Assembly: GCF_006345805.1 (NCBI RefSeq)
Contig: NW_021833706.1
Location: 9,926 to 73,925 of the forward strand
Length of the DNA stretch: 64,000 nt
Reading direction: 5' to 3'
From: Octopus sinensis
Taxonomy: Eukaryota
Position numbers and translations under genes: made by a program. This document shows, in pieces, positions 343 to 51,009 of the stretch. Position 1 is the first letter of the stretch, and each line of letters begins with the position of its first letter. Under the pieces are notes generated by a model that had not been told where the DNA came from, ran no database searches, and saw nothing but the letters and a program-made list of their open reading frames with translations.

Positions 343-1332
343 TCAACTTTGAAATTTGATAAACTGAACCTCATACAATGTATTCTAGAATCATTCCCTG
401 AGGATTACATCGTTCTGTTAAGCTATTTGTCACATTCTATGACGTCTCTGTTGTTTCGTTTTGAATATTTTCTGAAAACTTGTAGCAGCAATTTATTTAA
501 CGATATATATTAGTCGTATAAAATTTTGCGAAACACAATTACAAGAAACGTATATGTTGCTTTATTATATTATATTTTATGATTCGCCGAATGTAAATTT
601 CTATTCAATATTTACTGCACACAACGCAGGTTAATTCTCGACCATTGACATACGGTGGACATGGCAATGAACCACAAGCAGCCTGAACGAAATATAATAG
701 AGCTCCGTCTTCGTTACTGTAACCCGCTGGATCAGCTTCTGGTGCGTAGTCCACACAACATATTAAAGTCTGCCCTTATGATCATGACGCGCGGTCATCA
801 AATATCCTGAAAATTCAATCGTCCAACCAGGGTAACAGCGTGTCCTAGCTGGTAAAAATCATTACAACAGCAGGTTGTCGTGTCAAACAGACAGCGCACG
901 GAACGTTGTGTTCATAAATTGATTCAGCGTTAGCAAAAAGAAAGAGTTTATTAGTTGGGTATAATTCGAATTGATATTCACTGCCATAAATGTAACCACA
1001 TTTTTCTACTTCTGTCGTATAATTGGCCCAAATGGGATCGTTAGGTAACACAAGAGATTACTACCGCCACCTGTGTGGTCAAAGAATTGTCCACCACCAC
1101 ACATAGAATTGGTAAGAATAAATCAAATAAAAAAAGATGTAAGCAAAATTATATATGAAATAACGGAAACATTCATTACAATTTGACCCTTAAAGAAGTC
1201 GTTTAGCCACGTGTGAACGAATTGTGGTGTATATGTTAGTGTTATATGAGTGTAAGCTGTGTGTTGGTGTATGCTTGAGATCATAGCTGTGCATTTGCAT
1301 TCTCTTCATATATATATATATATATATCGAAG

Positions 1333-12745: not shown

Positions 12746-14849
12746 TGCTGTTTTTGCAACTTTTGCACAGAATTTGCGTTTTAGAGTTTGAAATATGCCA
12801 TTAGCACATTTTAACGAACCCAAAAATTGCTTATGCCTAATACTGAGCGCTAATACTGTTCACTGGAAACGCCATGTTGAATGTTTCCATATATTCATTT
12901 GTCAATTTGCATTTCGTGCTTTCATATTACTTAATTATTATTCTTTTTCTCTAGCTTTTTACAAATCGAGCATTCTTATGGCACGCAATTAATCGGACAA
13001 AAAACGTGCTGCCACCCACAGATCCCTCTTTTCCACGGATACCTTCGTTTATCTGGCAGCCATTCTACAAACTCCCACATACAAGGAGCAATCATGCTGG
13101 ATAGAGTGTGAAAGACTCAACATGTTGCACTGATTCCACCTAATGTATATTTTATAAGTCGTCTTCCTTTCCTTACTAAGTCGTTTATGTGTGTTACAGT
13201 TATTGTATGCATGTATCTCGAAGCAAGTTCCTCTTCTGCGAGTTTGATAGTTTTATGTTACAGACGGAGATAATTTGTTGAACTCGATGTTTTGTGGTGT
13301 TGCTGTAGATTCGGTTGATGCTGTTCCTGAAGTTTACTCATATTTCTTGGTGGTTTCATATTTTATTTTGGCACATCAGTGTTCAGGGAACGATGAGAGG
13401 CTGCGTGTGTAATGTGACGCGAGGCTGTGTGTCTGTGATTTTTGAAGAAAAGCGGGAATATGTGAATGTAGGTTGAAAATAGTTAATCGTGGGACGTGTA
13501 CTTGTACCTTTCGAAAGTGTTTCTTGAAAACTTCAATGTTTAGTAACCTGACAGTAGTTAGGTAGTCAACATTTTGTGGTATTACTTCAGTGGATATCAA
13601 ATATCCTTTATTAGGTAATATCCGCATTGGATTGCAGAGCTTTCATCGCATCGATTGTAGTTACAATGATACGTATGGGAGTATTTTTTTTATTACACCA
13701 TCATGATTTAGTGATGTTAGTTATAAGCTTTATCGTGTTTTCTGAAGATTGATCATGAAAGGTGATATATTTGTACGGGTGTTTCTTTTGGGGATTGTTT
13801 TCATTTTAAGACGGAATACAACACACATTTAAACGAATCATCATTTTACTTCAACATTTAAATTTGATAAACTTAACCTCAATACAATGTATGCTAGAAT
13901 CATTCCCCGAGGATTATATCGTTCTGTTAAGCTATTTGTCACATTCTATGACGTCTCTGTTGTTTCGTTTTGAATATTTTCTGAAAAATTGTAGCAGAAA
14001 TTTATTTAACGACATATATTAGTTGGATAAAATATTGCGAAACACAATTACAAGAAACGTATATGTTGCTCTATTATATTATATTTTATGATTCGCCGAC
14101 ATAAAGTTTCATATAGAAACGAATGTAAATTTCTATTCAATATTGACTGCACAAAACGCAGGTTAATTCTCGACCATTGACATACGGTGGACATGGCAAT
14201 GAACCACAAGCAGCCTGAACGAAATATAATAGAGCTCCATTTTCGTTTCTGTAACCTGCTGGATCAGCTTCTGGTGCATAATCCAACACACACATATTCA
14301 TGTCTGCCCTTATGCTTATAATACTCGGTCATCAAATATCCCGAATCTAGCTGTCCCAACCAGGGTAACACTCGGGTAACACTTGTCTGCTGGTAACATC
14401 ATAACAACAGCAGGTGTCGTGTCAAACAGACAGCGCACGGAACGTTGTGATGATGAAGTGATTCAGCGTTAGCAAAAGAAAAGAGTAGTTGGGTAAAAAT
14501 TTAGTTCATATTCACTACCCATAAATGTAACCTCCTTCTTCAACTTCTGTAGTATAATTGGCCCAAATGGGATCGTTGGGTAGACACAAGAGATTACTTC
14601 CGCCACCAGTATGGCTATAAAGTTGTCCACCAACAACACCTAGAATTGGTAAGAATAAATCAAGTAAAAAAGATGTTAAGCAAAATTATATATGAAATAA
14701 CGGATACATTCATTACAATTTGACCCTTAAAAGGAGTCATGTTTAGTTGCGTGTGAACGAATTGTGGTGTATATGTTAGCGTTTATGTGAGTGTAAGCTG
14801 TCTGTTGTTGTATGCTGATATCATAGCTGTGCATTTGCATTCTCTTCAT

Positions 14850-26041: not shown

Positions 26042-26080
<39 letters not shown>

Positions 26081-27776: not shown

Positions 27777-28556
27777 TCAATATTTACTACACACAACGCA
27801 GGTTAATTCTCGACCATTGACATACGGTGGACATGGCAATGAACCACAAGCAGCCTGAACGAAATATAATACAGCTCCGTCTTCGTTTCTGTAACCTGCT
27901 GGATCAGCTTCTGGTGCATAGTCCATACACACATATTCAAGTCTGCTCTTATGTCCGTTATGCTCGGTCATCAAATATCCCGAATACTCAGCTTTCCAAC
28001 CAGCGTAACACTTTGTCCTGGCTGGTAACATCATAACAACAGCAGGTTGTCGTGTCAAACAGACAGCGCACGGAATGTTGTGGTCATGAATTCATTCAGC
28101 GTTAGCAAAAGAAAAGAGTTTATTAGTTGGGTATAAGTCTAATTGATATTCACTGCCATAAATGTAACCACCTTTTTCAACTTCTGTCGTATAATTTGCC
28201 CAAATGGGGTCGTTAGGTAAACACAAGAGATTACTTCCGCCTCCAGTTTGGGTATAATGTTGTCCACCAACCACACCTAGAATTGGTAAGAATAAATCAA
28301 GTAAAAAACATATTAAGCAAAATTATATATGAAATAACGGATACATTCATTACAATTTTTCATTTAAAGGAAGTCATGTTTAATAACGTGTGGACGAATT
28401 GTGGTGTATATATGATAGTGTTTATGTAAGTGTAAGCTGTGTGTTGCTGAATCGCAGCTGTACATTTACCTTCTCATCATATATATATATATATATCGTA
28501 ATAAGCAACAAGTATATCCAGAAGTAATGCGGTACGTTTGTTTCATGCAACTCCAT

Positions 28557-31600: not shown

Positions 31601-31867
31601 TCCATCGATCGGTACGTACATACATCCACACATTAATACATACATACGTAAATGCATACATACATACATGCATATATAAATACATAAAGACATACATATA
31701 TTAACACAAAATCCATGACTTACCGTTCTCGATTTCTCTTCCATTTTTCCTATTCTTGAATCTTGATGAAGAATCACGATCGTCAGAACGAGAAGAACCC
31801 CAAAAGCTATGAGAGAAGAAATGGAATAACGCTGCGAAATATTCCTGGACAGTTGTGCGAAATCCAT
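27777..31867 (-). pseudogene. Copy C: true pseudogene
   Basis: In-frame TCA>TGA at 28092-28094 in exon 4 (27777-28276). Exon 3 is reduced to its last ~19 nt (31303-31321) and exon 2 is absent because of a ~7-kb deletion. Exon 1 (31724-31867) is still open. A mariner sits in intron 3. Confidence 0.9.
29847..31118 (+). mobile_element. Full-length (1272 bp) mariner transposon, DD34D, defective transposase
   Basis: TIRs CGAGGGACGTTCAATAAGTAATGCC and CGAGGGCCGTTCAATAAGTAATACC. TA duplication at 29845-46 and 31119-20, with the empty site gacaTAtcata in B, D and E (gacaTAtcgta in A). Transposase fragments MEPVEWRAVIRFL..., ITQDE, LLLQDNAPVH...YSPDLASSDFHLF give 34 residues between the last two Asp. 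Frameshifts and stops present. Confidence 0.95.
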
Positions 31868-32639
31868 TCTGGTGACAGTTGTCGGTCGTACGTGATACTT
31901 CGTGTGGCTTCAACAAAAGATCGAGATGCGAGGTTTAAGCTGAAGACCTGTAACTGAATTCCACGTATTTATTGAGCGCACAACAACCCAGCTCTGGCAT
32001 AGATCTTATCGTAAATTTATGAACCAATGCGATTGGTGGAACTGTAAAAGCGGGTGTGAACTTGTCTGACAGGTTTAATTATTGGAAAGAGATGGTTTGA
32101 TATTGTCACACAATAATTAGCAAAATATTTTGATGAATGAGAGACACGTGTAAAGTGAAATGATTCCTGTTTCTGGATATATTATGATATATTTATTTAC
32201 TAATGTTGTTATTCTTGGGAAACTGTTTTAATATTCAGTGTGGGAAGTATTTCGTTCAACCAACAAATACACAGACACACGCACACACACCGACACACAC
32301 ACTGAAACACACACACACACACACACACGCACACACTGACACACACACACCAACAAAACACTGACACACACACACACACACACTAACAAACAGACACACA
32401 CACACACACACACTGACACACACACACACACTCAAACATAGACACACACACTGACACACACACTGACACACACACACTGACAAACACACATACATTGGCA
32501 TAAACACACACTCACACACACACACACTAACGCACACACATACACAAACAATCACACACACACACGCACACTAACACACATACACACTGACAAACACACA
32601 CACACACACACTCACACACATACACACATACTCACACAC

Positions 32640-35517
32640 TGTTTTAATATTCAGTGTGGGAAGTATTTCGTTCAACCCACACAGTAATCGCAAGACTTAG
32701 TCTAATGAAGTCCGCTGTTCGGATTGGATTCTTCACAACAAGCGTTAATCGGATTAGAAAAGTTTTATGGGAATATCAAAATCAAAACCTACCAATTCCC
32801 ACCCACCCATACATATATACACACACACATACATACATGCATACATATATACACACATACATACACACATACATACATACACACATACATACACACATGC
32901 TTACATGTATACATACATACACACATACATACACTCATTCTTACATATATACATACATACATACCCCCATACATACAAATATACATACATACACACACAC
33001 ATATGTACATACACACATACATACACACATACATACATACAAACATACATACATACACACACATAGATACATACATACATAGATACATACATGCATACAT
33101 ACATGCATACATACATGCATACATACATGCACACATACATACATATATACATACAAACATACATACATACATACATGCAAACATACATACATACATATAT
33201 ACATACACACATACATACATGCATACATACATGCATACATACACACTCACGTATATACATACATATATACATACATACCCCCATACAAACATATATACAT
33301 ACATACACACAAATATATATACATACATACACACATACATGCACACATACATACATACAAACATACATACAAACACACACATACATACATACATACATAC
33401 ATACATACATACATTACATACATACTTCCATACATACATACATACATACATACATGCACACATACATACACACATACATACACACATACATACATGCACA
33501 CATACATACCCCCATACATATATACATACACACACACACATATGCATACATACAAACATACATACACACATACATACATACATACATACGTACATACATA
33601 CATACATACTTTCATACATACATACATGCATGCATATATGCATACATACATTTATGTATGTATACATGTATGCATGAATATAAGCATGTATATATCGAAT
33701 AGACACATATATACATACATACATACATACATACATACGTACATACATACACACATACTTACATCCATCCATCCATACATACATACATACATACTTGGTG
33801 GCTGCCCCTTCGTTATCGAGTTGGGCCATTGCACGAAGCTTAATCAATGTTGTTATCATGCTATGCCTGTGCATGAAGTTTTTTTTGAAAGCGAGGAAAG
33901 GCTGTGCACTGAGTCTATCCCACTCACTAAGCAACACCAGCCATAATCCGAAAAAAAAACAAGTCAACATCATCGGTAACCACTGAGCCGCAGGTTTTAT
34001 ATCGGAGTTATCCCAGTTACCTGAGGTACCTTCTCCTAGAAGGATGCCCTAACAAAGTCTAGGAGTCCTGCACTCCCAATGGTTTAACCGCGCGATCGGG
34101 TATTCAGTCCGATTATTTCTATGTCCCCGCGAATGATACAGCCTTAAGACATATATTGGATGGCAGTTGACTCTCAAGCGTTCTACCGCCCTTTGACGGG
34201 TTTTGTTTTTCATCCCGCAGGGTGACCAATAAACTCCCTCCTCACCAAACAAGTTTGGTGGGGTTGCCGGTTTAGTCGCCGACGAACCGACAATGCAACA
34301 GGTTGTACTGGGTTACATGTTACCAGTAGCACTCGAAAGTGACCTGAACTACATACATGCATACATACATACATATATACATACATACATATATACATAC
34401 ATACATGCATACATACATACATACATACATGCATACATACATACATACATACATACATACATACATACATACCCCCATACATACATATATACATACATAC
34501 CCCCCATACATACATATATACATACATACATACATACATACCCTCATTCATACATATATAAATACACACACACATATATACATACATACACACATACATA
34601 CACACATACATACATACAAACATACATACACACACACACATACATACATACATACATACATACATACACACATACATACTTTCACACTTACATATATACA
34701 TGCATGCATATATGTATACATACATACATGTATGTATACATGTATACATGCATGTATGTTTGAATATAAGCATGTATATATCGATAGACACATATACACA
34801 TACATATATATACAAACATACTTACATACATACATACATGCATACATACTTACATCCAGCCATCCATACATACATACATACTTGGTGGCTGCCCCCTCGT
34901 TATCGAGTATGGGCATTGCACGATGCTTAATCAACGTCGTTATCTTGCAATGCCTGTGCATGAAGATTTTTTTTTTTATAGTGAGGAAAGGCTGTGAACT
35001 GTGTCAATCCCAGTCACTAAGCAACAGCAGCCATAATCCGAATCGAAGTATAAGTCAACCTCATCGGTAACCACTGAGCCGCAGGTTTTATATCGGAGTT
35101 ATCCCGGTTACCTGAGTTACCTTCTCCTAGAAGGATGCCCTAACAATGTGTAGGAGTCCTTCAATCCCAATGGTTTAACCGCGCGATCGGGTATTCAGTC
35201 CGATTATTTCTATGTCCCCGCGAATGATACAGCCTTAAGACATATTGGATGGCCGTTGATTCTCAAGAGTTCCTCCGCTCTTTGACGGGTTTTGTTTTTC
35301 ATCCCGCAGGGTGTCCAATAAACTCCCTCCTCACCAAGCAAGCTTGGTGGGGTTGCCGGCTTAGTCGCCGACGACCCGACAATGCAACAGGTTGTACTGG
35401 GTTACATGTCACCAGTAGCACTCGAAAGTGACCTGACATACATACATGCATTCATACATACATATATACATACATACATACATACAAACATTCATACATG
35501 CATACATACATACATAA

Positions 35518-35548
<31 letters not shown>

Positions 35549-37500
35549 CATACATACATACATACATACAAACATTTATACATGCATACATACATACATA
35601 CTTACATACATACATATATACATACATACATACATACATACATACATGCATACATACATGCATACATGCATACATGCATACATACATTCATGCATATATA
35701 CATACATACATGCATACATACATACATGCATACATACATACATTCATGCATATATACATACATACATGCATACATACATACATGCATACATACATACATA
35801 CATGCATACCTACTTACATACATGCATACATACATACATACATACATACATACATACATTCATGCATACATACATACATACATACATACATACATACATA
35901 CATGCATACATGCATGCATACATACATACAGACATACATACATGCATACAAAAATATCCTGTTCATGTTGTTGAAATTCCAATGAAAGATACTTGGAACT
36001 AAGTTAGAAGCCGTCTCTCTTTCTGTTGGCCAGAAATATTCTATTAAAACCGAATAATGACATTCATACATATTTTTAGCTAGTCATTATCACTAGCTTT
36101 GAATATGTTTCTTCTTGTTTTATAAATCATAGCAAAACTTACAGGTACAGTGTCTCCCATTCGAAACTCAATTCGCAAGTGCACCTTCCGTATGGACTGC
36201 ATATGTACGACGGAATTCCATAGTTATGATTAAATTTTCTTAGATGAAGCATATTAGACCTCTCAGATATAGTTTGACCTAATTTAATATATATGTGTGC
36301 GTGCGTGTGTGTGTGTGTGTGGTGTGTGTGTGTGTGTGTAACACTCACTGTTTGGCCCTCGAAATAAGGTGAATTTGAAATAAGCTACAAAATAAATCTT
36401 ACAGCCATGTCAGATTTCAACAAAGTCCCATAATTTTTCCTATTGTAATGGCGGGTTGCATATGCAGCTGCGCATGCTCTGTACAGCTTAAACACCTGGC
36501 GGTCGTTTTAACTGTCTAATTATGCCGCTGAATCAAAAGATGAATTTGAAGATCTACCAGCGTCCGTATTCTCTGCAATTGTTTACGATTTACAACCAGG
36601 AAAATATTTGTAATCTGGAGAAGCGAATGCAGATTTACCCATTAGACTAATAATAGTGGGATAGTAAACATTAATAATCTTTAATCTTTATTGCAGCTTG
36701 ATGTTCTTAACCGAACCCTTCTTTTATCTAACAAATATTCGACACACTCCAACATACTGTCATGAATCCTATTGGATATAACGTGACGGTCACAACATCT
36801 CAGCCTTCTTACACACAGCATCCGTGATTGCCCTGACTATATTTGCTCTCTTTACTCTCACTTATATGGGTGTTGTATTCGTTTGGCATTAAATGTATTC
36901 AGCTTCTAGGATCCATCCTTTTTTCGGTTCTGGTATGTTTACGTAGATGAGTGAAAGAAATCGTCGTATTTGATGTTCTCTGCTTTCGAAATGAGGCAAT
37001 TTTTCTGGTTGATTTCATTTCTTATTCTTGTATATCAGCATTTAGTGTATGACGTGTATGTTGTGGGCATCGAGTTTCGTTTTGTATCTTATTTTGAAGA
37101 GAGGTGGGAATTTTGTGATATAGATTTAGGTTGGCAGGACCAATACTCATTTATACTGTCTTTTGAAGGATTGATCGCGTAAATTCCACATTCTCAGAGA
37201 GCTTAATTTGAACATTTTGTGATATTTCTAAAGTAGACGATAAATAGGTTTTATAAGATATGGGGTAGGAATGGAACGGAGAGCTTTCCTGATTAATAAC
37301 GTCAAATAGAATGGATTGTGTGGAAGTATCTGGTTGTTGTTGAAAGAATCAGTTAAGTTCCGTGCGAAGTAATGTAGCGGTTCATGGCTCCTCGTCAGAA
37401 TCCGAGTTGTAATTTGAAAACCAAGATGTCTGAGATAGTAGCGTCGAGTATTAGAAATTCTAAGGCTGTGCATGAAAAGCTGATATAATTCTATGGTGGT
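32640..37500. repeat. Spacer X: (TACA)n arrays with two copies of a ~555-bp retroposon-derived unit (33794-34350, 34880-35436)
   Basis: The whole block recurs from 61490 to the window end with a single unit (62232-62786). The unit contains CCTTCTCCTAGAAGGATGCCCTAACAAAG, resembling (from recall) RTE 5' UTR sequence in reverse orientation. Confidence 0.75.
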
Positions 37501-37837
37501 ACTTTATTTGGGGTTTGTTGAATCATGAGACAGAAGACAAAATACTGTTAAACAAAATAACATTTTATTTCAACGATAAGTTTGATAAACTGAAATCTTA
37601 CAAAATGTTTTCTAGAATCATTTCGACAGATTTAGACTTTTCTTGTTTTTGAGGATATTTCTTGTATTCTACGTCGCCTCTTTTGTATTGTTTGAATATC
37701 TTCTGTAAACTAGTATAACAGTTTATTGTAACGATAGACATACTTTAAAGAAAATATTAGGTAAAACAATTGAAATTTTATGTTATTTATTGTAATTCAC
37801 AGACATATTTTCATATGGAACCGAATTTAATTTCTGT

Positions 37838-38334
37838 TCAATATTTACTGCACACAACGCAGGTTAATTCTTGACCTTCGACATACGGTGGACATGGCAA
37901 TGAACCACAAACAGTCTGAACGAAATATAATAGAGCACCATCTTCGTTTCTGTAACCCGCTGGATCAGCTTCTGGTGCATAATCCACACAAACATATTCA
38001 TGTCTGCCCTTATGATCATAACGCTCGGTCATCAAATATCCTGAATACTCAGTTGACCAACCATCGTAACACTTTGTCCTGGCTGGTAACATCATAACAA
38101 CAGCAGGTTGTCGTGTCAAACAGACAGCGCACGGAACGTTGTGTTGTTGAAGTGATTTAGCGTTAGCAAAAGAAAAGAGATTATTTGAGTAGTGGCCTAA
38201 TTCATATTCACTGCCATGAATGTAACCACCTTCTTCAACTTCAGTCGTATAATTGGCCCAAATGGGATCGTTAGGTAAACACAAGAGATTACTTCCGCCA
38301 CCTGTGTGGTCATAAAATTGTCCACCAACCACAC
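37838..38334 (-). CDS. Copy D coding exon 4 (497 nt): (G)VVGGQFYDHTGGGSNLLCLP...ELTCVVCSKY*, spongin short-chain collagen / collagen IV NC1-like domain
   Basis: Open 164-aa frame in the ORF track with acceptor ttctag|GT GTG. Family motifs GGGSNLLCLP, GSEY, HNVPCAVC, LPARTKC, GYLM, EYVCVD and LPCPPY. Joined exons give 768 nt = 255 aa plus stop. Confidence 0.9.
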
Positions 38335-38540
38335 CTAGAATTGGTAAGAATAAATCAAGTAAAAAAGATATTAAGCAAAATTATATATGAAATAACGGAA
38401 ACATTCGTTACAATTTTTCACTTAAAAGAAGTCATGTTTACTAGCGTGTGAACGAATTGTGGTGTATATATTAGTGTTTATATGAGTGTAAGCTGTGTGA
38501 TGCTGTATGCATGAGAACGTAGCAGTGCATTTGAATTCTC

Positions 38541-38616
<76 letters not shown>

Positions 38617-38621
38617 CAAAG

Positions 38622-39530
38622 TAAGCAACAAGGATATCCAGAGATAATGCAGTACAATTGTTTCATGCAACTCCATTTAATTGAACAATACAATCATTAC
38701 ATCAATTTAAAATTTACAGCAATCTTCAGCTGCATCAATACATAGGATTTAATTAAATTAAAACAGATTGACACATTAGTATAATTATACCTAAAATATC
38801 CAAGAAGTTAAGGAGATACACAAAGAACATGTTTTCTCTACTTCAGCATAGAAGTTAATAAAATTATAAAGAAATTTATGAATACTTACGAATACAAAAA
38901 GTATTCAACCACTCCTATCCTTTTGTTATATTATTCTTCTTAATATTCCTTTGGAAAACCCTAAACTCCAACTGTATTCATAGCAACATTGTTTAAAATA
39001 TTTAACTATAATATATGATAAGACCTTCCGTTTCATTGTCAATAGTCTGCCAGTGTGCGACCCCCTTAATTATCAGCTAACATCTTGTTTTAAGTTTTCC
39101 CTTACTAAACCTCATGGTATTGCTTATAATAATTCTTGATGTTTTTATGACTATACCAACTAGAATGTCTGTCTACCCCCTAAGCCCTCACCCTAACAGA
39201 TACTGCCCTATGTTCTCTCAGCCTTAGATATACAAAGGATTTTTAAACAATTAAAACTGACCCCATAAAGACAAATAATCAGTGGTAAGCTGAGTCTTCT
39301 TGATAATTTTAGTAACTGCTATGCTGAAATAGAGACAACATGTTCTATGTAAAATCTTAGAGATTTTAAGTATAATTATACAAATGTGTCCATCTGTTGT
39401 ATTTTGATTAAATTCTACGTCTTTGTGCAGCTGAAGATTGCTCTAAATTTTAAACTGATGTAATGATTACATTATTGAATTAAATGGAGGTGCATGAAAC
39501 GAACGTACTGCTTATTTTAATCGTTGCTTA
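38622..39530. mobile_element. Same foldback element, copy D
   Basis: Homologous arms and core. The right arm has a small deletion. Confidence 0.8.
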
Positions 39531-40837
39531 TTTAAATTTTAATCACCTTACTTTGAAATTGTATGGATAATGCCGTACTAAATTCTGGAGCCTCAACTTA
39601 AGTACCATATTCATCTGAATCAATATATATATATTATATATATATTATATATATGTAGGTATATGTATATATATGTTGTGTGTATACGGGTAAGTATTTG
39701 GGGATATGACATGGATTATTATGTAAGTTTGCATGGGGAAGTGTATTTGCGTGGATGTTAATAGAAGGAGAAAAAGAAAGGAATTCTGTAACGCATGTAC
39801 ACGTGTTTACCCGAAATGGAAAATTTGTTCACGAGTGAATGGGGATATTTTGGTGATGGAGTCGGCGACCGATAAAATATACGTATAGGATTTATAAAGA
39901 GCAGATTCGGAGCATTTTAAAGGAATGTGAGGTTGACTGGGGAAGCTGTTTGTAGCAGCAGTTTTGAATTGGAAGTTTCGGAATTACCTTACAAAGATAT
40001 ACTGTATAATTAATGAGGTGATGTGGTGCATGAAAAGAGCAAGGTTTTAGCGATAGGACGATTTCGGTGACGCGGAGAAGAATAGAAGTGCATTCTGTAC
40101 TCTGTTGTGTTCTCTCACTAATAATTAATCTCCCTATATTTTACTTAATGAATACAGTCCTTAGCTTTTTCCATCAGTTACAGTATGTGGCTTGTCCAGT
40201 CCTCATTCTACATTGTGTGTTCATTCCATTAACCATTAACAGTCACTGTCATCAATTCTAATAGACTATTTTCAATTTAGCCCACACCTACGATCATTGG
40301 GCACTCTAATTAATGATAGTCACGTGGCCACTTTTCAGCTCTGGTCACTCACGTACAATACCACCATCCGTAGCCAGTACAATTGATCACCAGTTAGCAG
40401 CCTCGGTATTTGATATCTACAATCCAAAGCTGGTCAGCCTGAAATTCTTGATCGCCATGGTGGTTTTCAGTCCAGCCCTGTCTGTAATTTAACGTAGAGA
40501 TATCTATATTCTATGGTTAGACAACATTCTTTTCATTTGGTCCGTAGTAGACAACATATAATATACTGATTTGACCAAATACCTACAAAGGAGTAAGCAG
40601 TCTTGTGTAGTGTCTGTATAGTCTACAGGTATAGACGTTTGAAACGTGACATATCATAAAAGGATTTGAGAATGTCTATGTCAGAAAACCCGAGAAAGGG
40701 TGAGTGTGTGTGCGTGTGCGTGGGAGAGAGTGTTAGAGAGAAAGAGAGGTAACAAAAAGAGAGAATGAGAGGTATAAAAAGAGAAAAAGAGAAGGACAAA
40801 AAGAGAATGAGAGGTCAGAAATATAAAGTATACTAAC

Positions 40838-40912
40838 CGTCATATACAAGGTTTGAATAAGGAGGACAAGTTGTTCTACCCCACCGGGTATACAATGATC
40901 CGAGACCGGGTT
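40838..40912 (-). CDS. Copy D coding exon 3 (75 nt, phase 1 to 1): (K)PGLGSLYTRWGRTTCPPYSNLVYD(G), start of the NC1-like domain
   Basis: Acceptor ttttaatttcgcag| and donor G|GTTAGT. YTRWGRTTCP is the typical N-terminal motif of the spongin/short-chain collagen C4 domain. Intact in B (17197-17271) and E (53076-53150). One nt short in A (3565-3638). Confidence 0.85.
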
Positions 40913-41649
40913 CTGCGAAATTAAAATGAAATAAAGTAGTTTAAAAGAAAGAATTGGGGAATCACTTACAAAGTAGGTTGTTGGATGGGAAGGAATTGAT
41001 GGAGAAGAGAGAAATATAGAATTTAAGAAAGAACGAGTGAATGAATGAAAGTCAGAACGAAAGATGTAAATAATAAGAATAAATTGTAAAGAAAGAAAAA
41101 AGACATTTGTCTGTTGAGCCTGTTGGTGACGTTGATGTCAAAGATTTGAGAGATTAATCCCAGAATATCAGAATGTGTATCGGTCTCCGCTATGAACGGA
41201 TGTATGTATGATACGTAAACTTGGGTATGAGTATATATACTTCTCAATAGAATAATGATAAAATATTCGCCAGGTGCGAATATTCATCGGTCAATTACAA
41301 ATATCAGTTTGGAGCTCGGCGCAAATAAGGCCATCATAACTACAATATGAAAATAACAACCATACCGCATCATTTGTCGATTTAGTTAAAAGACATCGCA
41401 TCCGGATCTCGAGTAGAGGAGTCCGTTCGATAAATGTATAGCACACCCCACACAACACCGGTGCAACCAGCAAGAAGTCTGGAACTAAATATGGGGTGTT
41501 TGGCGTGGGAGCACAAAATTGACGCTCTCAGGACATCAAAGCAGATCAAGGAGGGAACAACCTTTAATAATTGAGAATTAAACTGTCTGAATTGTTAGAT
41601 ATAATCTGCCTGTAAGATATAATCGGTGTCTGCTCTAAAAAATTTCGTT

Positions 41650-42480
41650 TGTCCGGCTTTTGCATCCAAATTGAGAGTGATCCACCTGAATGAAGTTGGA
41701 CATCGAAATGGATTCGTGATTGTATTATTTTTTTCGGCAGGTTCTTCTTCGGTTGAACGCTTATTTGAGCTAAACTCACTTAAATGTGATAAAGCTGCTG
41801 GTGAAAAGCAGGTTCGGCTTGATATTTTAGAAACCTTAAATACAGATGGTATTCTCTGAGTGTCCCATGTACGCTAGGTGGATGGGACCTCTGGAAAAAA
41901 TACCAAGGCAATGAAATATAGGGTGACAATCACAATTTCTTCGGACAGAGACCAAGGAGTGTGCTCGAATTATAGAAATGTCTACACTAGATGTCAAGAA
42001 AAGATTTGTAGGAAAATTGTCGCGCCCAAGATTACCGTCCGACACGCGGTACACTCGACCTTTTAGACGTTCAAAACAGATCTTCCAGCAAATACAGAAA
42101 TATTTCCAAAGTTTAAACGCTATAAACCACGAAAAGGCACACGATCACGTGCCCTGGGTATTGTTTTGGATGGTTTTCCAGGAAGGTGAGTTTAGTGGGC
42201 AAATCATGGTTGCCATAAAGTACTTATATGGATGTTCAAATGTTTGTATTTCTGTAAAAGTCGAAAGTTTTCAACGTGAAGGTTTCACTTAGTTGAAGTG
42301 TGCATTGTTAGTGCCCCTTCTCACATTCTTTTTTGTGATCTGGTTGAATATGCGCAGCCATTGTGGTAGAGGTATCCCAATTCATCTCTACGTGGTCGGT
42401 CGACTGTTATTTGTAGACGACATGCTGCTACCAGATTCGTCTGATGTTCACCAACAACGTGCACTGAATTGGTTGACAAA
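41650..42480 (+). mobile_element. RTE-LINE remnant, copy D (APE part deleted)
   Basis: ORFs 41626-41859, 41978-42292 and 42293-42610 carry the RT motifs. The junction at ~41650 removes about 600 bp relative to A. Confidence 0.85.
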
Positions 42481-43000
42481 TACGCACTGTGTAGGAAAGT
42501 GGAAAATCATTATTTCGGGTCTCTATTCACGAATGATTGGAAACACAAGAGTGGACAGAATGCTGAATTGTAGATATAAACGCAGTGAAGCGCCAGCTCA
42601 GGGCATTTGATTCTCAAAAGAAGAGGGCATTCTATGCTTATCGTATGCAAGCCGGTGGGGCTCGCTCTGAGCACTCTAACTTTTTCACAGTGAACGTACC
42701 GGCCACCTAGGACACTCGGCAAAGAGCTCCCTCAGAGGAACCGTGCGGGCCGAAACAATTATCGACGTAGCACTGCAAATATGCTCATATACACGCAATA
42801 AATGGCATAGTATATTAGAATAACATTTTATTTAGGAACTTATTGTAAAATATTTTAAAATAAATTCAGGCAAGTGTCTTAGTATATACTATCGTAGACA
42901 TGTGGATAGTAATGTGGAACTAATTCAAAGTTGGTGAAATTATAAATCATTGGTTAAGGAGACACGGATAAAAGACTTTAGCTATAAAATTATTTCTTAC

Positions 43001-43052
43001 TTGGTGTGTCATCAGGTTTATCGTCGAGAGATTTCTTGGAGATGAAACGGTT
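43001..43052 (-). CDS. Copy D coding exon 2 (52 nt, phase 0 to 1): NRFISKKSLDDKPDDTP, stalk
   Basis: Acceptor tttctattttttcacag| and donor CCAA|GTAAGA. Phases link exon 1 to exon 3. Exactly 52 nt in A (6671-6722), B (19902-19953) and E (55861-55912), with mostly synonymous differences (ACA/ACG/ACT, GAC/GAT, ATC/ATA). Not in the ORF track. Confidence 0.75.
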
Positions 43053-43745
43053 CTGTGAAAAAATAGAAATAGCATCATATAAATAGAACTTCAGGGTATT
43101 TATTATCGTTTAGAACTTAAAACAATGCAATAGATGACAACATATTCGAGCAGGTATCATTGCCAACACTACCATCTCAACCCCTTAGGAATCTTCTAGA
43201 AGGCGCTTCCACCCTGTCAAACGATTTCTGAACAATAACAGACAATACAACTCTGCATTTCAAATGACATCGTTTGGTGAATCTAAGAAGATAGATAAAC
43301 ATGAATTTACGCCGACGTCAAAGTTCAAGGGCAAGTCTATCCCATCATTGGTTCTCTGGTACCCGCGAATGAACAACCACAGTTCCTCCAAATTTACTCT
43401 ATTAGTGATGTAGGACAACAAACCCGACGTGAGGTGTCAAAATTTCCGATGATGGGTCGTGTTAGACACAGCGCACACTGCTGCAAAGGAGAGTATATCC
43501 ACTGACATTTCGGTGCGTTCAAAAATCACTCAAACTCCACATCCAATTTTGCAAGACAGGTTACGGCCTGAAACACTCCAAACGGACGCATAGCATGTTG
43601 CTTAGTCGAATTAGCCCAGCATTTACTCTACAAATGTTTTGTTGTCAATGTTGCACTTTCCCATATCACCTTTTTTAAAATGACTGGTATATATTATATA
43701 CCATCTTTGCCATTTTAATCCCCAGCAATGCCGGGTATGACTGCT

Positions 43746-43784
<39 letters not shown>

Positions 43785-44381
43785 CTACACACACATTTCT
43801 ACATATATATATATATATATATATCTACACACATGTATATTTATAGTTAAATTTAATCCAAACAAGAAAGCACAAAAAAACAACAACGCGAGAACGTGGA
43901 ACCAGCATAGTATTACTGGACGCTCAGTAGAGAAGGAAAGAAGGAGGGTTTAACGTTTCAGGTGCAGCTCTTCGTCGGAAACTTAGGAGAAGGAAAGATC
44001 CAGAGGAGGGAAGACGGAAGACAAAAAATCGCCAATGGTACACACACGGGCACATTTTGAATGACCGGAAGGAAATGGGAGAAGTAAAGATCTTTCAAAG
44101 ACAGGAGAAAGGTAGAGGAGGAGGGATGTGTGTTTGTAAGTGTGGATAAGAGCGTGCGCGGAGGTCTGCGTGTGTGTGTGGGTTTTTTTTGTGTTGTGTG
44201 GGAGTAATGTGCGTGCGTGTGTGCGCTTAAGTACCTGTATGTGCGTGTGTATCTGTGCCCATGTGTGTATAAGTGTGGGTATTGTTATATATGAGTATTG
44301 TTCGTTAAAGGTATATGTGGGCATCTGTGCTGGTGTGTGTGTATGTGTGCGTGTGCGTGTATTGTGTGCGTATGATACGTA

Positions 44382-44758
44382 CACTTGCGTCAGAAATTAA
44401 TTAGCACTTCTCAAATTTCTACATTAAATAGGTTAAATCAATTAACCTATGAGCTGTTCAAAACGTCTTACGCGATGAGAAAACTTAGTATGGTGTGATT
44501 TCGGTCCTTGCGAGGCGCTACCTATATCTATTAAACAAAGGAAGATTTGTCTGCATCCGCACTCCAATTTGTTGCACTGCTATGTCAACATCATAAGGCT
44601 GTAGACTCTCAAACTGCTCTGCAAACAAAGTTACGTCATCATTCTGCGCAACAGTGAACTCGCAACAAAGCAATAGTTCGAGATATGGCCACTAGGTGAC
44701 AGCACATACCTTGAGTGAAGAGCAAATCAAGGGTGCTAATTAATTTCTGACGGTAGTG
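44382..44758. mobile_element. Tc1/mariner-type MITE (377 bp) specific to copy D
   Basis: TIRs CACTTGCGTCAGAAATTAATTAGCAC and CACTACCGTCAGAAATTAATTAGCAC, flanked by TA on both sides. Other copies show the empty site (atgatgcaTAtatctccgtg in B and E). Confidence 0.85.
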
Positions 44759-45014
44759 TATATCTCCGTGATCACCGTCACAGACCAGGCTATCAGTTGT
44801 TGCTCCATATCGCTGGTCACAATGCGCTTCGCGTTGTTTTAGCATTCAAATGACAACGCGAGTAGGCCAACAGAAGGAAGGGAAAAAGTTGTAGCGAAAG
44901 GGTACATCAGTGATCACAACAACCCAATTCCCTGAGACTCGTGGAGCATTAAACACTCACTACGCCCAGTCCGCTTCCCTAACCACTAGGCCACTGCCAC
45001 TGCCACGCCACACA

Positions 45015-45104
<90 letters not shown>

Positions 45105-45115
45105 ATATAATCAAA

Positions 45116-45729
45116 AATGAGGGTGTCTGAAAGACACCAACATGCCGAAATAGCAGTCGAAATTCTGACTATAAAACCACGAGGTAAAGCGGAGGGACAA
45201 AACATACAAGCAAAATTATTGAATAATTCAAGATCCAAGGATTTCTGGTTCTGCTTTAAATAAGCTTTACCATCATCAATTGAATATATCAAGGGTACAT
45301 AAATACAGATTTATATATGCACAGCAAACGATATACTTACACATACGAGCGTCGTGCATACATACATATGCACGTATTGACACAGCCAGTTGAATTGCCC
45401 GCCAAAGCACCGCATAAATACGATATGGTTAAAATAAGCACCGCAGTGAATATAATAACGAATTATATAAATTTATATATGAGGATAATATCGATATTTA
45501 AGTATCAAAATTATCAAGTGGCCAGCATGAAAGAAATACCTCACAGAGGTAAAAAATGTTTTAACAATTAAATATGAGGGTGTCTAAAAGACACCAACAT
45601 GCCGAAATAGCAGTCGAAATTCTGACTATAAAACCACGTTAAGTGTTCATATCGTACCATGAGGTAAAGCGGAGGGACAAAACATACGAGCAAAAATCAT
45701 TGAATAATTCAAGATCCAAGGATTTCTGG
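45116..45729. repeat. Insertion with ~135-bp direct terminal repeats (45116-45248, 45574-45729), copy D only
   Basis: ATGAGGGTGTCT(G/A)AAAGACACCAACATGCCGAAATAGCAGTC...CCAAGGATTTCTGG occurs twice around a ~325-bp core, inside (TA)n. Confidence 0.75.
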
Positions 45730-46418: not shown

Positions 46419-46502
<84 letters not shown>

Positions 46503-46507
46503 ATATA

Positions 46508-46554
<47 letters not shown>

Positions 46555-46566
46555 ATATATATATAT

Positions 46567-46613
<47 letters not shown>

Positions 46614-46659
46614 TGTATGTACATACATACGTAACTATATATGTGTGTATGTATATATG

Positions 46660-46694
<35 letters not shown>

Positions 46695-47001: not shown

Positions 47002-47032
<31 letters not shown>

Positions 47033-47428: not shown

Positions 47429-47572
47429 CGTTTTCGATTTCTCTTCCATTTTTCCTATTCTTGAATCTTGATGAAGAATCACGATCGTCAGAACGAGAAG
47501 AACCCCAAAAGCTATGAGAGAAGAAATGGAATAACGCTGCGAAATATTCCTGGACAGTTGTGCGAAATCCAT
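47429..47572 (-). CDS. Copy D coding exon 1: MDFAQLSRNISQRYSISSLIAFGVLLVLTIVILHQDSRIGKMEEKSKT, signal-anchor/TM exon of a short-chain collagen C4-like (NC1-type domain) protein
   Basis: ATG in AGAATGG context, 48 codons, ends at a phase-0 donor ACG|GTAAGT. Upstream acceptor TTACAG| at ~47652. Hydrophobic run SISSLIAFGVLLVLTIVIL. The same exon recurs at 11123-11264, 24829-24972, 31724-31867 and 60448-60591. Confidence 0.8.
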
Positions 47573-50500
47573 TCTGGTGACAGTTGTCGGTCGTAAGTGA
47601 TACTTCGTGTGGCTTCAACAAAAGATCGAGATGCGAGGTTGAAGCTGAAGACTGTAACTGAATTCCACGTATTTATTGAGCGCACAACAACCCAGCTCTG
47701 GCATAGATCTTATCGTAAATGTATGAACCAATGCGATTGGTGGAACTGTAAAAGCGGGTGTGTGAACTTGTCTGACAGGTTTAATTATTGGAAAGAGATG
47801 GTTTGATATTGTCACACAATAATTAGCAAAATATTTTGATGAATGAGAGACACGTGTAAAGTGAAATGATTCCTGTTTCTGGATATATTATGATATATTT
47901 ATTTACTAATGTTTTTATTTAATTTTATTTGTTATTCTTGGGAAACTGTTTTAATATTCAGTGTGGGAAGTATTTCGTTCAACAGACGAGTACACAGACA
48001 CACACAAAACACACACACACACAAACACACACACACAAACACACACACACACACTGACACACACACACACTGACACACTGACACACACACACACACACAG
48101 ACACACATACACAGGTACGCACACACTGACACACACACACACACTGACACACACACACACGCACACTGAGAAACACACACACACTGACACACACACACCG
48201 ATACACACACAAATACAAACACACATACACACTGACACACCCACACACACACACACTCTCACACACACACACTGACACACACACACTGACATACACACAC
48301 ACACATACACTGACACACACACACACACACTGACATACACACACACACACACACACACACTGACACACATACACACTGACATACACACACACACACAGAC
48401 ACACACACACTCACACACACACACACTGACATACTCATACACACATACACACATTAACACACACACACACATTCACACACACACACATACACTGACGCAC
48501 ACACACACATACACACTGATAAACACACACACACACACTGACCCACACACTGTGACTCACACACACTGACACACACACACGCTGTGACACACACACACAC
48601 ATACACACACACGGACAGATGCACACACACACACACACACATATGCGGGGAAAATGCAGGCTCGTACGAGCGACCGCAGTTACTGTTGGGGCACAAGGTT
48701 GAAGTCATCTCCTCTAGCGAAGTAGTTATCAAAGAGAAATACCGAAGGGAGGTAACTCACGACAGACTCCAGCCTGGCGCTCTAATGGCGTCACTTACTC
48801 GTTGTTGTTGACTATGTTTAAGTTAAAGCTATGGTTTTAAGTTTGTCCAGATATTCCCCTCTTCGGTATTTTCTTTTGATAACGGCTGAACTGGAACCCG
48901 ATAGGGAGCAGCAGTGGACTGATATGCTGTTTTTGCCGCTTTCTGCACTGAATTTGCCTTTAGAGTTTGAAATATGCCATTAGCACATTTTAACGAACCT
49001 AAAAATTGCTTATGCCTAATACTGAGCGCTAATACTGTTCACTGGAAACGCCATGTTGAATGTTTCCATATATTCATTTGTCAATTTGCATTTCGTGCTT
49101 TCATATTACTTAATTATTATTCTTTTTCTCTAGCTTTTTCACAATCGAGCATTCTTATGGCACGCAATTATTCGGACAAAAAACGTGCTGCCACCCACAG
49201 ATCCCTCTTTCCACGGATACCTTCGTTTATCTGGCAGCGATTCTACAAACTCCCACATACAAGGAGCAATCATGCTGGGTAGAGTGTGAAAGACTCAACA
49301 TGTTGCACTGATTCCACCTAATGTATATTTTATAAGTGGTGTTCCTTTCCTTACTAAGTCGTTTATGTGTGTTACAGTTATTGTATGCATGTATCTCGAA
49401 GCAAGTTCCTCTTCTGCGAGTTTGATAGTTTTATGTTACAGACGGAGATAATTTGTTGAACTCGATGTTTTGTGGTGTTGCTGTAGATTCGGTTGATGCT
49501 GTTCCTGAAGTCTACTCATATTTCTTGGTGGTTTCATATTTTATTTTGGCACATCAGTTTTCAGGGAACGATGAGAGGCTGCGTGTGTAATGTGACGCGA
49601 GGCTGTGTGTGTGTGATTTTTATAGAAAAGCGGGAATATGTGAATGTAGGTTGAAAATATTTCATCGTGGGACGTGTACTTGTACCCTTGTCGAAAGTGT
49701 TTCGTGAAAACTTCAATGTGTTAGTAACCTGACAAGTAGTTAGGTAGTCAACATTTTGTGGTATTACTTCAGTGGATATCAAATATGCTTTATTAGGTAA
49801 TATCCGCGATTGGATTGCAGAGCTTTCATCGCATCGATTGTAGTTACATTGATACGTATGGGAGTATTTTTCTTATTAAACCATCATGATTTAGTGATGT
49901 TAGTTATAAGCTTTTATCGTGTTTTTTGAAGATTGATCATGAAAGGGTGATATATTTGTACGGAGGTGTTTCATTTGGGGATTGTTTTCATTTTAAGACG
50001 GAATACACACATTTAAACGAATCATTTTATTTCAACTTTTAAATTTGATAAACTGAACCTCATAAAATGTATTCTAGAATCATTCCCTGAGGATTACATC
50101 GTTCTGTTAAGCTATTTGTCACATTCTATGACGTCTCTGTTGTTTCGTTTTGAATATTTTCTGAAAACTTGTAGCAGCAATTTAATTAACGACATATATT
50201 AGTTGGATAAAATACTGCGAAACATAATTACAAGAAACGTATATGTTGCTTTAAAATATTATATTTTAGGAATCGCCAACAAATTTTCATATAGAAACGA
50301 ATGTAATTCTATTCAATATTTACTGCACACAACACAGGTTAATTCTCTCGACATCGACATACGGTGGACATGGCAATGAACCACAAGCAGCCTGAACGAA
50401 ATACAGTAGAGCTCCATCTTCGTTTCTGTAACCCGCTGGATCAGCTTCTGGTGCATAATCCACACACACATATTCTTGCCTGCCCTTTTCTGCGTGATGA

Positions 50501-51009
50501 CTAGCCATCAAATATCCTGAATACTCAGCTGTCCAACCAGAGTAACACTTTGTCCTGGCTGGTAACATCATAACGACAGCAGGTTGTCGTGTCAAACAGA
50601 CAGCGCACGGAACGTTGTGCTCATGAATTGATTCAGCGCGTTAGCAAAAGAAAAGAGTTTATTAGTCGGGTAATACTGTAGTTGATATTCACTGCCATGA
50701 ATGTAACCACCTTTTTCAACTTCTGTCGTTATAATTGGCCCAAATGGGGTCGTTAGGTAGACACAAGAGATTACTTCCGCCACCTGTGTGGTCGTACCAT
50801 TGTCCACCAGCCACACCTTGAATTAGTAAGAATAAATCAATTAAAAAAGATATTAAGCAAAATTATATACGAAATAACGGAAACATTCATTACAATTTTT
50901 CACTTAAAAGAAGTCATGCTTAGTCACGTGTGAACGAATTGTGGTGTATATATGTTAGTGTTTATGATGTTTAACTGTGTGTTGCTGAATCGTAACTGTA
51001 CATATACCT

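What the first reader, a model, noticed from the sequence alone, without database searches (positions are those of the whole stretch)
37838..38334. Hypervariable segments on a fixed 10-Cys NC1-like scaffold: candidate diversifying recognition-protein family
Aligning exon 4 of A/B/C/D/E by eye, variation is confined to short segments. After GGQ: FFDH/LYSH/HYTQ/FYDH/WYDH. After GSEY: QFELYPT/ELNFYPT/QLDLYPT/ELGHYS-/QLQYYPT. Before HN: ESIYE/ESLHH/E*IHD/KSLQQ/ESIHE. After YLM: TARHDH/TEYYKH/TEHNGH/TERYDH/ASHHAE (38012-38029 in D; codons such as CGT CAT GAT / TAT TAT AAG / CAT AAC GGA / CGT TAT GAT / CAT CAC GCA are almost all replacements). Exon 3 is protein-identical in B, D and E, exon 1 differs at about two residues, and the cysteines plus DYAPEADPAGY...LPCPPY are nearly invariant. 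The variable residues are rich in His, aromatic and charged side chains. That this reflects positive selection on a ligand-binding face (pathogen, allorecognition, gamete or adhesion) is inference. I know of no description of this domain as a diversified receptor array in cephalopods, but could not search.
Basis: partly seen in the sequence, partly recalled or inferred. Interest (0 to 1): 0.85.

Follow-up and report, generated by a model that had tools for sequence, protein, structure and literature searches.

The report
Octopus NC1-like gene array, variable loops
The region is the last exon of one gene in a large tandem array of octopus membrane-anchored, collagen-IV-NC1-like ("short-chain collagen C4-like") proteins whose surface loops differ strongly between copies, but the tests run here fit loosely constrained loops shuffled by gene conversion better than an arms-race type of selection.

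Summary
Window 37838-38334 (minus strand) is an intact 164-codon last exon (copy D) of a four-exon gene. Four paralogous exon-4 copies lie 10-13.6 kb apart. Amino-acid variation is clustered in short segments on an invariant 10-Cys scaffold. The same pattern appears in 14 intact Octopus sinensis copies.

A, B and E carry frameshifts. C has a stop codon and lacks exon 2 and most of exon 3. At least A's lesions look like assembly deletion errors.

The family is the known "short-chain collagen C4-like" (spongin-type NC1) family. Here it has no Gly-X-Y repeats and has an N-terminal hydrophobic anchor.

The diversifying-selection reading is only weakly supported:
- Synonymous divergence is also raised in those segments.
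- A home-made FUBAR-like scan gives 2 sites with block trees and 13 with one tree.
- The variable columns are the same ones that vary family-wide across phyla.
- Gene-conversion mosaicism is strong.

Function is unknown. I infer a surface or matrix oligomerising module with loop-set specificity. I found no published description of this array.

The parts
37838..38334 (-). Copy D exon 4. It opens with a phase-1 acceptor (ctag|GT), then 164 codons and a TGA stop at 37840-37838. It encodes most of the NC1-like 10-Cys domain. It is the only intact exon-4 copy in the window.
40838..40912 (-). Copy D exon 3 (75 nt). It encodes (K)PGLGSLYTRWGRTTCPPYSNLVYD(G), the start of the NC1-like domain including the first Cys. 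It has an AG acceptor and a GT donor.
43001..43052 (-). Copy D exon 2 (52 nt). It encodes the stalk NRFISKKSLDDKPDDTP.
47429..47572 (-). Copy D exon 1 (144 nt, starts at ATG). It encodes MDFAQLSRNISQRYSISSLIAFGVLLVLTIVILHQDSRIGKMEEKSKT. A hydrophobic 19-mer starts at residue 15, read as a signal anchor or TM helix.
   Evidence: In the AF2 model of homologue P0014, residues 16-53 form a helix.
38306..38317 (-). Variable segment 1 in D (FYDH, exon-4 codons 6-9)
38186..38203 (-). Variable segment 2 in D (ELGHYS, codons 44-49). This loop varies in length between copies by in-frame 3-bp indels.
38144..38158 (-). Variable segment 3 in D (KSLQQ, codons 59-63)
38012..38029 (-). Variable segment 4 in D (TERYDH, codons 102-107)
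38222..38224 (-). Codon 37 (Y in GGYIHG). It is one of the two sites with posterior >= 0.9 for beta > alpha under both tree schemes in the home-made FUBAR-like scan. The other is D codon 87, at 38072-38074.
37786..37791 (-). AATAAA, 47 nt after D's stop codon. This is a candidate polyadenylation signal, read from the sequence only.
605..1102 (-). Copy A exon 4. It has 4 one-base indels, AG>AT at the acceptor and a TAA. Otherwise it is identical to an intact O. sinensis exon (protein P0004).
14137..14639 (-). Copy B exon 4. It has six indel events (+1, -5, -1, +8, -1, +1). B's exons 1-3 are intact.
27777..28276 (-). Copy C exon 4. It has an in-frame TGA in variable segment 3. The unit lacks exon 2 and most of exon 3, so it is a truncated pseudogene.
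50313..50816 (-). Copy E exon 4. It has three insertions (+1, +2, +1). E's exons 1-3 are intact.

Best explanation
The finding is the last exon of one gene (copy D, 255 aa) in a large octopus tandem array of spongin-type "short-chain collagen C4-like" genes.

The encoded protein has:
- an N-terminal hydrophobic signal anchor;
- a short stalk;
- a disulfide-rich domain with 10 Cys, related to the collagen IV NC1 domain;
- no collagen triple helix.

The array evolves by tandem duplication plus frequent gene conversion or unequal exchange. The promoter, exons 1-3 and introns are kept 93-98% alike. Exon 4 retains older, mosaic diversity. Within exon 4 the beta-strand and cysteine scaffold is under purifying selection (omega about 0.3). 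Four to six connecting loops evolve almost freely (omega about 0.7), tolerate in-frame indels, and are reshuffled between copies as blocks. At most a handful of sites show beta > alpha.

Inferred, not shown: the domain sits outside the cell and oligomerises as NC1 domains do. The loop set of each paralogue would then set which partner chain or ligand it accepts. On this reading the array gives a graded repertoire of surface or matrix modules, not an arms-race receptor set.
For: Family and architecture:
- There are over 1,000 homologues. The best are Octopus sinensis, O. vulgaris and O. bimaculoides "short-chain collagen C4-like" proteins at 75-88% identity.
- The four-exon model has canonical splice sites.
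- A hydrophobic 19-mer starts at residue 15, and no octopod member has a Gly-X-Y run. Pfam Collagen hits only 6 of 81 homologues.
- The AF2 model has mean pLDDT 85.8, with a long N-terminal helix followed by a beta-rich domain.
- Foldseek's top 16 PDB hits are all collagen IV NC1 (E 2e-5, probability 1.0).
- The literature describes spongins as 7 shared plus 3 unique Cys, with NC1 acting as a recognition module.

Array:
- The window holds 5 copies.
- About 248 kb of O. sinensis chromosome CM016876.1, sampled between 3.97 and 6.55 Mb, holds 14 intact exon-4 copies.

Concerted evolution and mosaicism:
- Identity along the repeat unit falls from 0.98 at exon 1, through 0.93-0.96 in introns and 0.90 in exon 4, to 0.80 in the 3' flank.
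- Hudson-Kaplan Rmin is 34 in 498 bp, and the PHI-like test gives P = 0.002.
- 29 of 231 pairs share unusually long identical tracts at P <= 0.01, against 2.3 expected.
- Identical loop motifs recur in different combinations.

Selection:
- Tree-based counts give 0.68-0.70 for those segments.
- 125 of 166 sites have posterior >= 0.9 for beta < alpha.
- Octopus-variable columns match the family-wide variable columns (rho 0.53, P = 3e-13).
- The variable segments fall between the predicted strands.

Expression: a peptide of a close array member was found in the O. vulgaris ink proteome.
Against: - Segment dN is 1.4-1.6x exon-wide dS and far above intron divergence.
- 2 to 13 sites reach posterior >= 0.9 for beta > alpha, depending on the tree.
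- Exon 4 is the least homogenised coding part of the unit. That is also what selection against homogenisation would produce.
- His and acidic enrichment in the loops is not what purely neutral drift predicts.
- My codon analyses are home-made, use only 22 sequences and NJ trees, and include frame-corrected broken copies.
- Foldseek TM-scores to NC1 are low (about 0.2). Neither Pfam C4 nor a PDB profile search finds the domain.
- Membrane topology, oligomerisation and any ligand are untested.
Confidence: 0.55

Rival explanations
1. The loops form a ligand-binding face under positive diversifying selection, and the array is a germline-encoded recognition repertoire for pathogens, allorecognition, gametes or cell identity.
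For: - Discrete hypervariable segments sit on an invariant scaffold and recur in O. sinensis.
- 14-18 distinct haplotypes per segment occur among 22 copies.
- Segment dN exceeds exon-wide dS by 1.4-1.6x.
- Some sites have beta > alpha.
- Exon 4 escapes the homogenisation seen in the rest of the unit.
- Loop motifs are shuffled combinatorially.
- His, Tyr and acidic residues are enriched.
- The architecture looks membrane-anchored.
Against: - Local dN/dS in the named segments is 0.64-0.75 and nominally below 1.
- No segment or sliding window is significantly above 1.
- The same columns vary across phyla.
- There are no data on surface clustering, expression or binding.
Confidence: 0.22
2. A structural-material role. 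These are matrix or secreted-material proteins (ink, cuticle, beak-like or adhesive matrices) in which His/Tyr/acid-rich loops serve metal coordination or cross-linking. Their exact sequence matters little, so they drift.
For: - His is enriched 12-fold in the loops.
- Family relatives are spongin skeletal collagens.
- A family peptide was detected in the ink proteome.
- Loop omega is near neutral.
Against: - There is no collagenous domain.
- The N-terminal hydrophobic segment looks like a membrane anchor, not a cleaved signal peptide.
- A material protein does not obviously need over 100 distinct paralogues.
- The idea rests on composition only.
Confidence: 0.13
3. Artefact or decay. The differences between copies are sequencing or assembly noise, or pseudogene drift, with no functional family behind them.
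For: - 4 of 5 exon-4 copies in the window are not open.
- Unit A shows a strong excess of one-base deletions relative to O. sinensis: 86 versus 26 gap events (P = 1e-8), many outside homopolymers.
- Copy C is structurally truncated.
Against: - A's variable segments are identical in an independent O. sinensis assembly in which the exon is intact.
- 14 of 14 O. sinensis copies are intact and carry the same kind of variation.
- Scaffold omega is 0.28-0.30 even among the window copies.
- All Cys are conserved after frame correction.
- There is protein-level evidence for a family member.
Confidence: 0.05

Closest known systems
Spongin short-chain collagens, also called "short-chain collagen C4" (Exposito 1991; Aouacheria et al. 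2006; Fidler et al. 2017, PMC5395295)
   Same: There is clear sequence homology: database relatives carry this name and E-values reach 1e-97. The C-terminal NC1-type domain has 10 conserved Cys, matching the described pattern of 7 shared with collagen IV plus 3 spongin-specific. The family is distributed across non-ecdysozoan invertebrates and amphioxus.
   Different: The octopus proteins have no Gly-X-Y collagenous domain, which among the sampled homologues was found only in named sponge and cnidarian members and one unnamed sequence. They have an internal hydrophobic anchor instead of a plain signal peptide. They are organised as a very large tandem array with mosaic hypervariable loops. I found none of this described.
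Collagen IV NC1 domain (PDB 1LI1, 1M3D, 5NAX; Pfam C4 PF01413)
   Same: NC1 domains are the only significant Foldseek hits (16 chains, probability up to 1.0). hhalign aligns a shared CAVC...P-C-GW...GY core. NC1 is known as the recognition module that selects chains for trimerisation. That makes loop-encoded partner specificity a natural analogy.
   Different: Global superposition is poor (TM about 0.2). Pfam C4 does not hit, and an HMM profile of the family finds no NC1 chain in the PDB. The literature reports no HSQ motif in spongins and, from predictive modelling, that spongins lack the domain-swapping region. No triple helix is attached.
Expanded, tandemly arrayed invertebrate recognition families: bivalve C1qDC, snail FREPs, and clustered protocadherins in octopus
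   Same: These are also large lineage-specific tandem arrays with variability concentrated in parts of a conserved fold and with gene-conversion mosaics. This comparison rests on my own knowledge plus the C1qDC example listed.
   Different: The fold is unrelated. No expression, binding or dN/dS > 1 evidence was obtained here. Diversity is germline paralogous only, and nothing suggests somatic diversification.

Membership tests
Spongin-type short-chain collagen ("short-chain collagen C4-like") | Significant full-domain sequence similarity to named members | tested here: met
   1,032 hits at E <= 1e-3. The top hits are named short-chain collagen C4(-like), with 99-100% query coverage.
Spongin-type short-chain collagen ("short-chain collagen C4-like") | Ten conserved cysteines in the NC1-type domain (7 shared with collagen IV plus 3 spongin-specific) | tested here: met
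   D has 1 Cys in exon 3 and 9 in exon 4. All 9 exon-4 Cys are invariant in all 22 exon-4 copies (the exon-3 Cys is conserved in A, B, D and E) and invariant or nearly so in 81 homologues. I did not map which seven correspond to collagen IV.
Spongin-type short-chain collagen ("short-chain collagen C4-like") | Short collagenous (Gly-X-Y) domain N-terminal to the NC1 | tested here: not met
   No run of 4 or more Gly-X-Y in any octopod member. Pfam Collagen hits only 6 of 81 homologues and none from octopus. D's exons 2-3 encode only a 20-residue stalk.
Collagen IV NC1 (Pfam C4, PF01413) | Match to the Pfam C4 model, or a sequence-profile match to solved NC1 chains | tested here: not met
   There is no Pfam hit at E <= 10 for D or at E <= 1 for 81 homologues. 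A family HMM against PDB sequences finds no NC1 chain.
Collagen IV NC1 (Pfam C4, PF01413) | NC1 fold | tested here: inconclusive
   Foldseek's top 16 hits are exclusively NC1 chains (E 2e-5 to 3e-2, probability up to 1.0). TM-scores are about 0.2 and rmsd about 17 Å.
Collagen IV NC1 (Pfam C4, PF01413) | Trimer and hexamer assembly, including the sulfilimine Met93-Hyl211 cross-link | not testable with these tools
   No multimer modelling or model coordinates were available. The literature says spongins lack the HSQ motifs and the domain-swap region.
   Against local dS the ratio is 0.64-0.75. Against exon-wide dS it is 1.4-1.6. The counting test finds no site significant. The FUBAR-like scan gives 2 sites with block trees and 13 with a single tree. 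Strong recombination and synonymous-rate heterogeneity confound all of these.
I can only say that the segments lie in loops between predicted strands.
   The only expression evidence is one peptide of a family member in the O. vulgaris ink proteome.

The most novel reading that the evidence does not exclude
Octopus genomes carry a megabase-scale tandem array, possibly over 100 genes, of membrane-anchored, collagen-less NC1 "recognition modules". Their loops are kept diverse and recombined by gene conversion. This would be a germline combinatorial cell-surface code, for homo- or heterotypic oligomer specificity, self/non-self recognition or cell identity, built on the collagen IV assembly domain. 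It would parallel the octopus protocadherin expansion.
Probability: 0.15. Interest if true: 0.8.

Novelty: new variant of a known kind. Interest (0 to 1): 0.45.

Why it matters
The NC1 domain is known as the module that tells collagen IV chains which partners to assemble with. Here the same kind of domain has no collagen, sits on a membrane anchor, and is multiplied into a large array with reshuffled variable loops. That could be a new use of an ancient matrix-assembly domain as a specificity code in cephalopods. It also gives a tractable system for studying how gene conversion homogenises most of a gene while one exon stays diverse. If the loops are merely unconstrained, the array is an ordinary lineage-specific expansion. 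The main practical lesson would then be that visually hypervariable segments need a local synonymous control.

Tried and rejected
- Pfam on D exon 4 and on 81 homologues gave no C4 hit.
- phmmer and a family HMM against PDB sequences gave only chance hits (Mdm2 RING, galectin).
I modelled the 87%-identical O. vulgaris homologue P0014 instead.
- A MAFFT alignment of 800 bp of intron 3 across 22 copies was unusable because of microsatellites and indels (p = 0.32). I replaced it with chained pairwise BLAST identity along the unit.
- The look-up for P0016 found no gene on record.
- The site-wise binomial N/S test found no positive site and has low power.
- I found no orthologues of copies B-E in the O. 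sinensis or O. vulgaris loci and proteins fetched. Their frameshifts therefore could not be checked against a second assembly.
- Literature searches for an octopus or cephalopod description of this family as an expanded or diversified array returned nothing relevant.
- I rejected the idea that the variation is read error.
- I considered and rejected somatic diversification, because orthologous A copies in two assemblies have identical loops.

Full report
**What is at the coordinates**

Window 37838-38334, read on the minus strand from 38332, is an uninterrupted 164-codon reading frame ending in TGA. It opens with VVGGQFYDHTGGGSNLLCLP and ends with CGSLPCPPYVEGQELTCVVCSKY*. A tblastn search and a DNA alignment find four further copies on the same strand:
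- A at 605-1102
- B at 14137-14639
- C at 27777-28276
- E at 50313-50816

The copies are spaced 10-13.6 kb apart. Upstream exons were located with an octopus homologue's N-terminus. For D they are:
- exon 1, 47572-47429
- exon 2, 43052-43001
- exon 3, 40912-40838
- exon 4, 38334-37838

All have canonical GT/AG boundaries and give a 255-aa product. An AATAAA lies 47 nt after the stop codon.

**Check of the observation**

I collected 22 exon-4 copies:
- 5 from the window
- 14 from four O. sinensis loci
- 2 from O. vulgaris
- 1 from O. bimaculoides

Of the 166 codon columns, 82 are invariant at the protein level. Twenty-seven have entropy of at least 1 bit, and these are clustered. There are 12 adjacent pairs against 4.2 expected, and none of 20,000 permutations reached 12. 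Further variable stretches exist at alignment codons 30-37 and 87-96 and at single sites 113, 143 and 154. His is 12-fold enriched and acidic residues 2-fold enriched in the segments.

The variation is not read noise. Copy A's exon 4 matches an intact O. sinensis exon (protein P0004) at every position except its lesions, including all variable segments.

Only D is open.
- A has four one-base indels, an AG>AT change at the acceptor and a TAA. It also has one-base deletions in exons 1 and 3.
- B has six indel events in exon 4.
- E has three.
- C has an in-frame TGA. It also lacks exon 2 and all but about 20 nt of exon 3, so it is a truncated unit.

After frame correction all copies keep every conserved residue.

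Unit A can be compared with its O. sinensis counterpart over 9.7 kb. The two differ by 2% substitutions. There are 86 gap events in the window against 26 in O. sinensis (binomial P = 1e-8). Nineteen of the 59 one-base window deletions are outside homopolymers. All 14 O. sinensis exon-4 copies are intact. I therefore think A's frameshifts are mostly assembly deletion errors. For B and E I could not find a second assembly of the same copy, so their status is open.

**What the gene is**

The protein search returns over 1,000 relatives. The closest, at 75-88% identity, are octopus proteins that NCBI names "short-chain collagen C4-like". More distant ones come from Argonauta, annelids, bivalves, octocorals, amphioxus and a sponge. 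This is the spongin short-chain collagen family. The literature describes it as a short collagenous domain plus an NC1 domain homologous to that of collagen IV, with seven cysteines shared with collagen IV and three of its own. The 10 Cys seen here fit that description.

Direct tests of the NC1 relationship are mixed.
- Pfam C4 does not hit.
- A family HMM finds no NC1 chain in the PDB.
- An AlphaFold model of the 87%-identical O. vulgaris homologue P0014 has pLDDT 85.8. It retrieves only collagen IV NC1 chains as significant Foldseek hits (16 chains, probability up to 1.0), but with TM-scores of only about 0.2.

I accept "NC1-like" as homology supported by the literature and by local structure. 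I do not file the domain as a Pfam C4 member.

The octopus proteins depart from the family description in two ways. They have no Gly-X-Y run at all; such runs occur in 6 of the 48 full-length homologues sampled, those with names being cnidarian or sponge. They also carry a hydrophobic 19-mer starting at residue 15. It is preceded by Arg residues and modelled as a long helix. I read this as a signal anchor that leaves the NC1-like domain outside the cell. That topology is inferred. The same architecture appears in some bivalve homologues, so it is not unique to octopus.

**Size of the array**

The four O. sinensis loci lie at 3.97, 4.12, 5.24 and 6.52 Mb of chromosome CM016876.1. They hold 14 complete exon-4 copies in about 248 kb. 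Extrapolating to one continuous array would give more than 100 genes. That is inference only.

**How the array evolves**

Substitution-only identity of unit D to the other window units changes along the repeat:

| Region | Identity |
|---|---|
| Promoter and exon 1 | 0.98 |
| Introns | 0.93-0.96 |
| Exon 4 | 0.90 |
| 3' flank | 0.80 |

The unit is therefore not uniformly old. The 5' part is homogenised and exon 4 is not.

Within exon 4 recombination signals are strong.
- 48% of informative site pairs fail the four-gamete test.
- Rmin is 34.
- Neighbour incompatibility is below permuted values (P = 0.002).
- 29 of 231 pairs share unexpectedly long identical tracts at P <= 0.01, against 2.3 expected. 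For example, two O. sinensis copies are identical over codons 92-166 but differ upstream.
- Identical loop motifs (TEYYKHKGRH, QLDLYPT, SSLHAEKGRL) recur in different combinations.

**Selection tests**

Pairwise Nei-Gojobori estimates:

| Partition | dN/dS | Notes |
|---|---|---|
| Whole exon | 0.43 | |
| Scaffold (rest of exon) | 0.30 | |

The result holds in the O. sinensis copies alone. That is an out-of-sample check, because the segments were defined on the window copies.

Synonymous divergence varies from 0.03 to 0.48 along the exon. It peaks in and next to segments 2 and 4. This is nominally below 1 (P = 0.01-0.02). No segment is significantly above 1.

Against exon-wide dS the segments reach 1.4-1.6. 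That yardstick ignores the local rise in dS and the post hoc choice of sites. A per-site binomial test finds no positive site and 18-26 negative ones.

I wrote a FUBAR-like empirical-Bayes scan: GY-type model, F3x4 frequencies, kappa 2, a 12x12 alpha/beta grid and fixed NJ branch lengths. Results:
- Block trees: two sites with posterior >= 0.9 (alignment codons 37 and 89), four at 0.8-0.9, and 125 sites under purifying selection.
- A single tree, which ignores recombination and is liberal: 13 sites.

The octopus-variable columns coincide with the columns that vary among homologues from other phyla (Spearman 0.53, P = 3e-13). They also fall between predicted strands, and one of them changes length by in-frame indels.

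**Interpretation**

The simplest account covers all of this. The array is a functional tandem family with a strongly constrained scaffold. It evolves by duplication and gene conversion. Its loops are weakly constrained and are passed around as blocks.

Positive selection at a few sites is possible but not demonstrated. Selection against homogenisation of exon 4 is an attractive explanation for the divergence gradient, but it is untested.

For function I commit, as inference, to an extracellular oligomerising module whose loops set partner or ligand specificity. The basis is the established role of NC1 as the chain-selection and assembly module of collagen IV. Protein-level evidence is limited to one peptide of a close array member in the O. 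vulgaris ink proteome.

**Novelty**

The family and its NC1 relationship are known, and the octopus proteins are in public databases under an automatic name. Six literature searches found nothing describing the collagen-less anchored form, the array or its mosaic hypervariable loops. That library omits most subscription journals. I rate this a new variant of a known kind, of moderate interest. Its most exciting reading is not supported by the tests I could run.

**Limits**

- No model coordinates were available, so surface clustering is untested.
- The codon analyses are my own implementations, run on 22 sequences of which five needed frame correction.
- The source species of the window is not established. 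It is closest to O. sinensis/O. vulgaris (98% substitution identity to O. sinensis in unit A).

Noticed in passing
window 31301-31867 and 27777-28276: Copy C is a truncated unit. Exon 1 is followed about 400 bp later by only the last ~20 nt of exon 3. About 6 kb, equivalent to D coordinates ~40856-47051 and including exon 2, is missing. Exon 4 carries a TGA.
   Followed up: partly
window 1-9777 versus L001 40910-50839 (O. sinensis CM016876.1): There are 86 gap events in the window against 26 in O. sinensis (P = 1e-8). Nineteen of the 59 one-base window deletions are at non-homopolymer bases. This suggests a deletion-prone consensus in this part of the window's assembly.
   Followed up: partly
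window 37440-47900 (unit D) compared with units A, B, C and E: Identity between repeat units falls steadily from the 5' end to the 3' end: 0.98 at the promoter and exon 1, 0.93-0.96 in introns, 0.90 in exon 4, and 0.80 in the 3' flank. Homogenisation is therefore uneven along the unit.
   Followed up: partly
window 11680-12461, 25392-26090, 32269-35950, 46413-46703, 47992-48641, 61028-63324: Long imperfect (AC)n, (CATA)n and (TA)n microsatellites lie within and between units. They account for the strong GC and AT skew at 32-36 kb and 60-63 kb.
   Followed up: no
L003 21924-22415 (O. vulgaris OX597833.1): An O. vulgaris exon-4 copy has an 8-bp deletion. The annotated protein P033 (P0033) consequently ends in an out-of-frame tail (...EYGLCTRS). 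P0057 and P0067 look similar. Frameshifted copies, or assembly errors, are therefore not confined to the window.
   Followed up: no
L001, L002 and L004 (O. sinensis gene models): Several NCBI gene models span 30-86 kb and skip over intervening exon-4 copies. They have odd N-termini (for example P0001, P0004, P0007), so the array is mis-annotated and its gene count is underestimated.
   Followed up: no
Variable segments of all 22 exon-4 copies (in D: 38306-38317, 38186-38203, 38144-38158, 38012-38029): Histidine makes up 16% of residues in the variable segments against 1.3% elsewhere. This could point to metal or pH-dependent chemistry.
   Followed up: no
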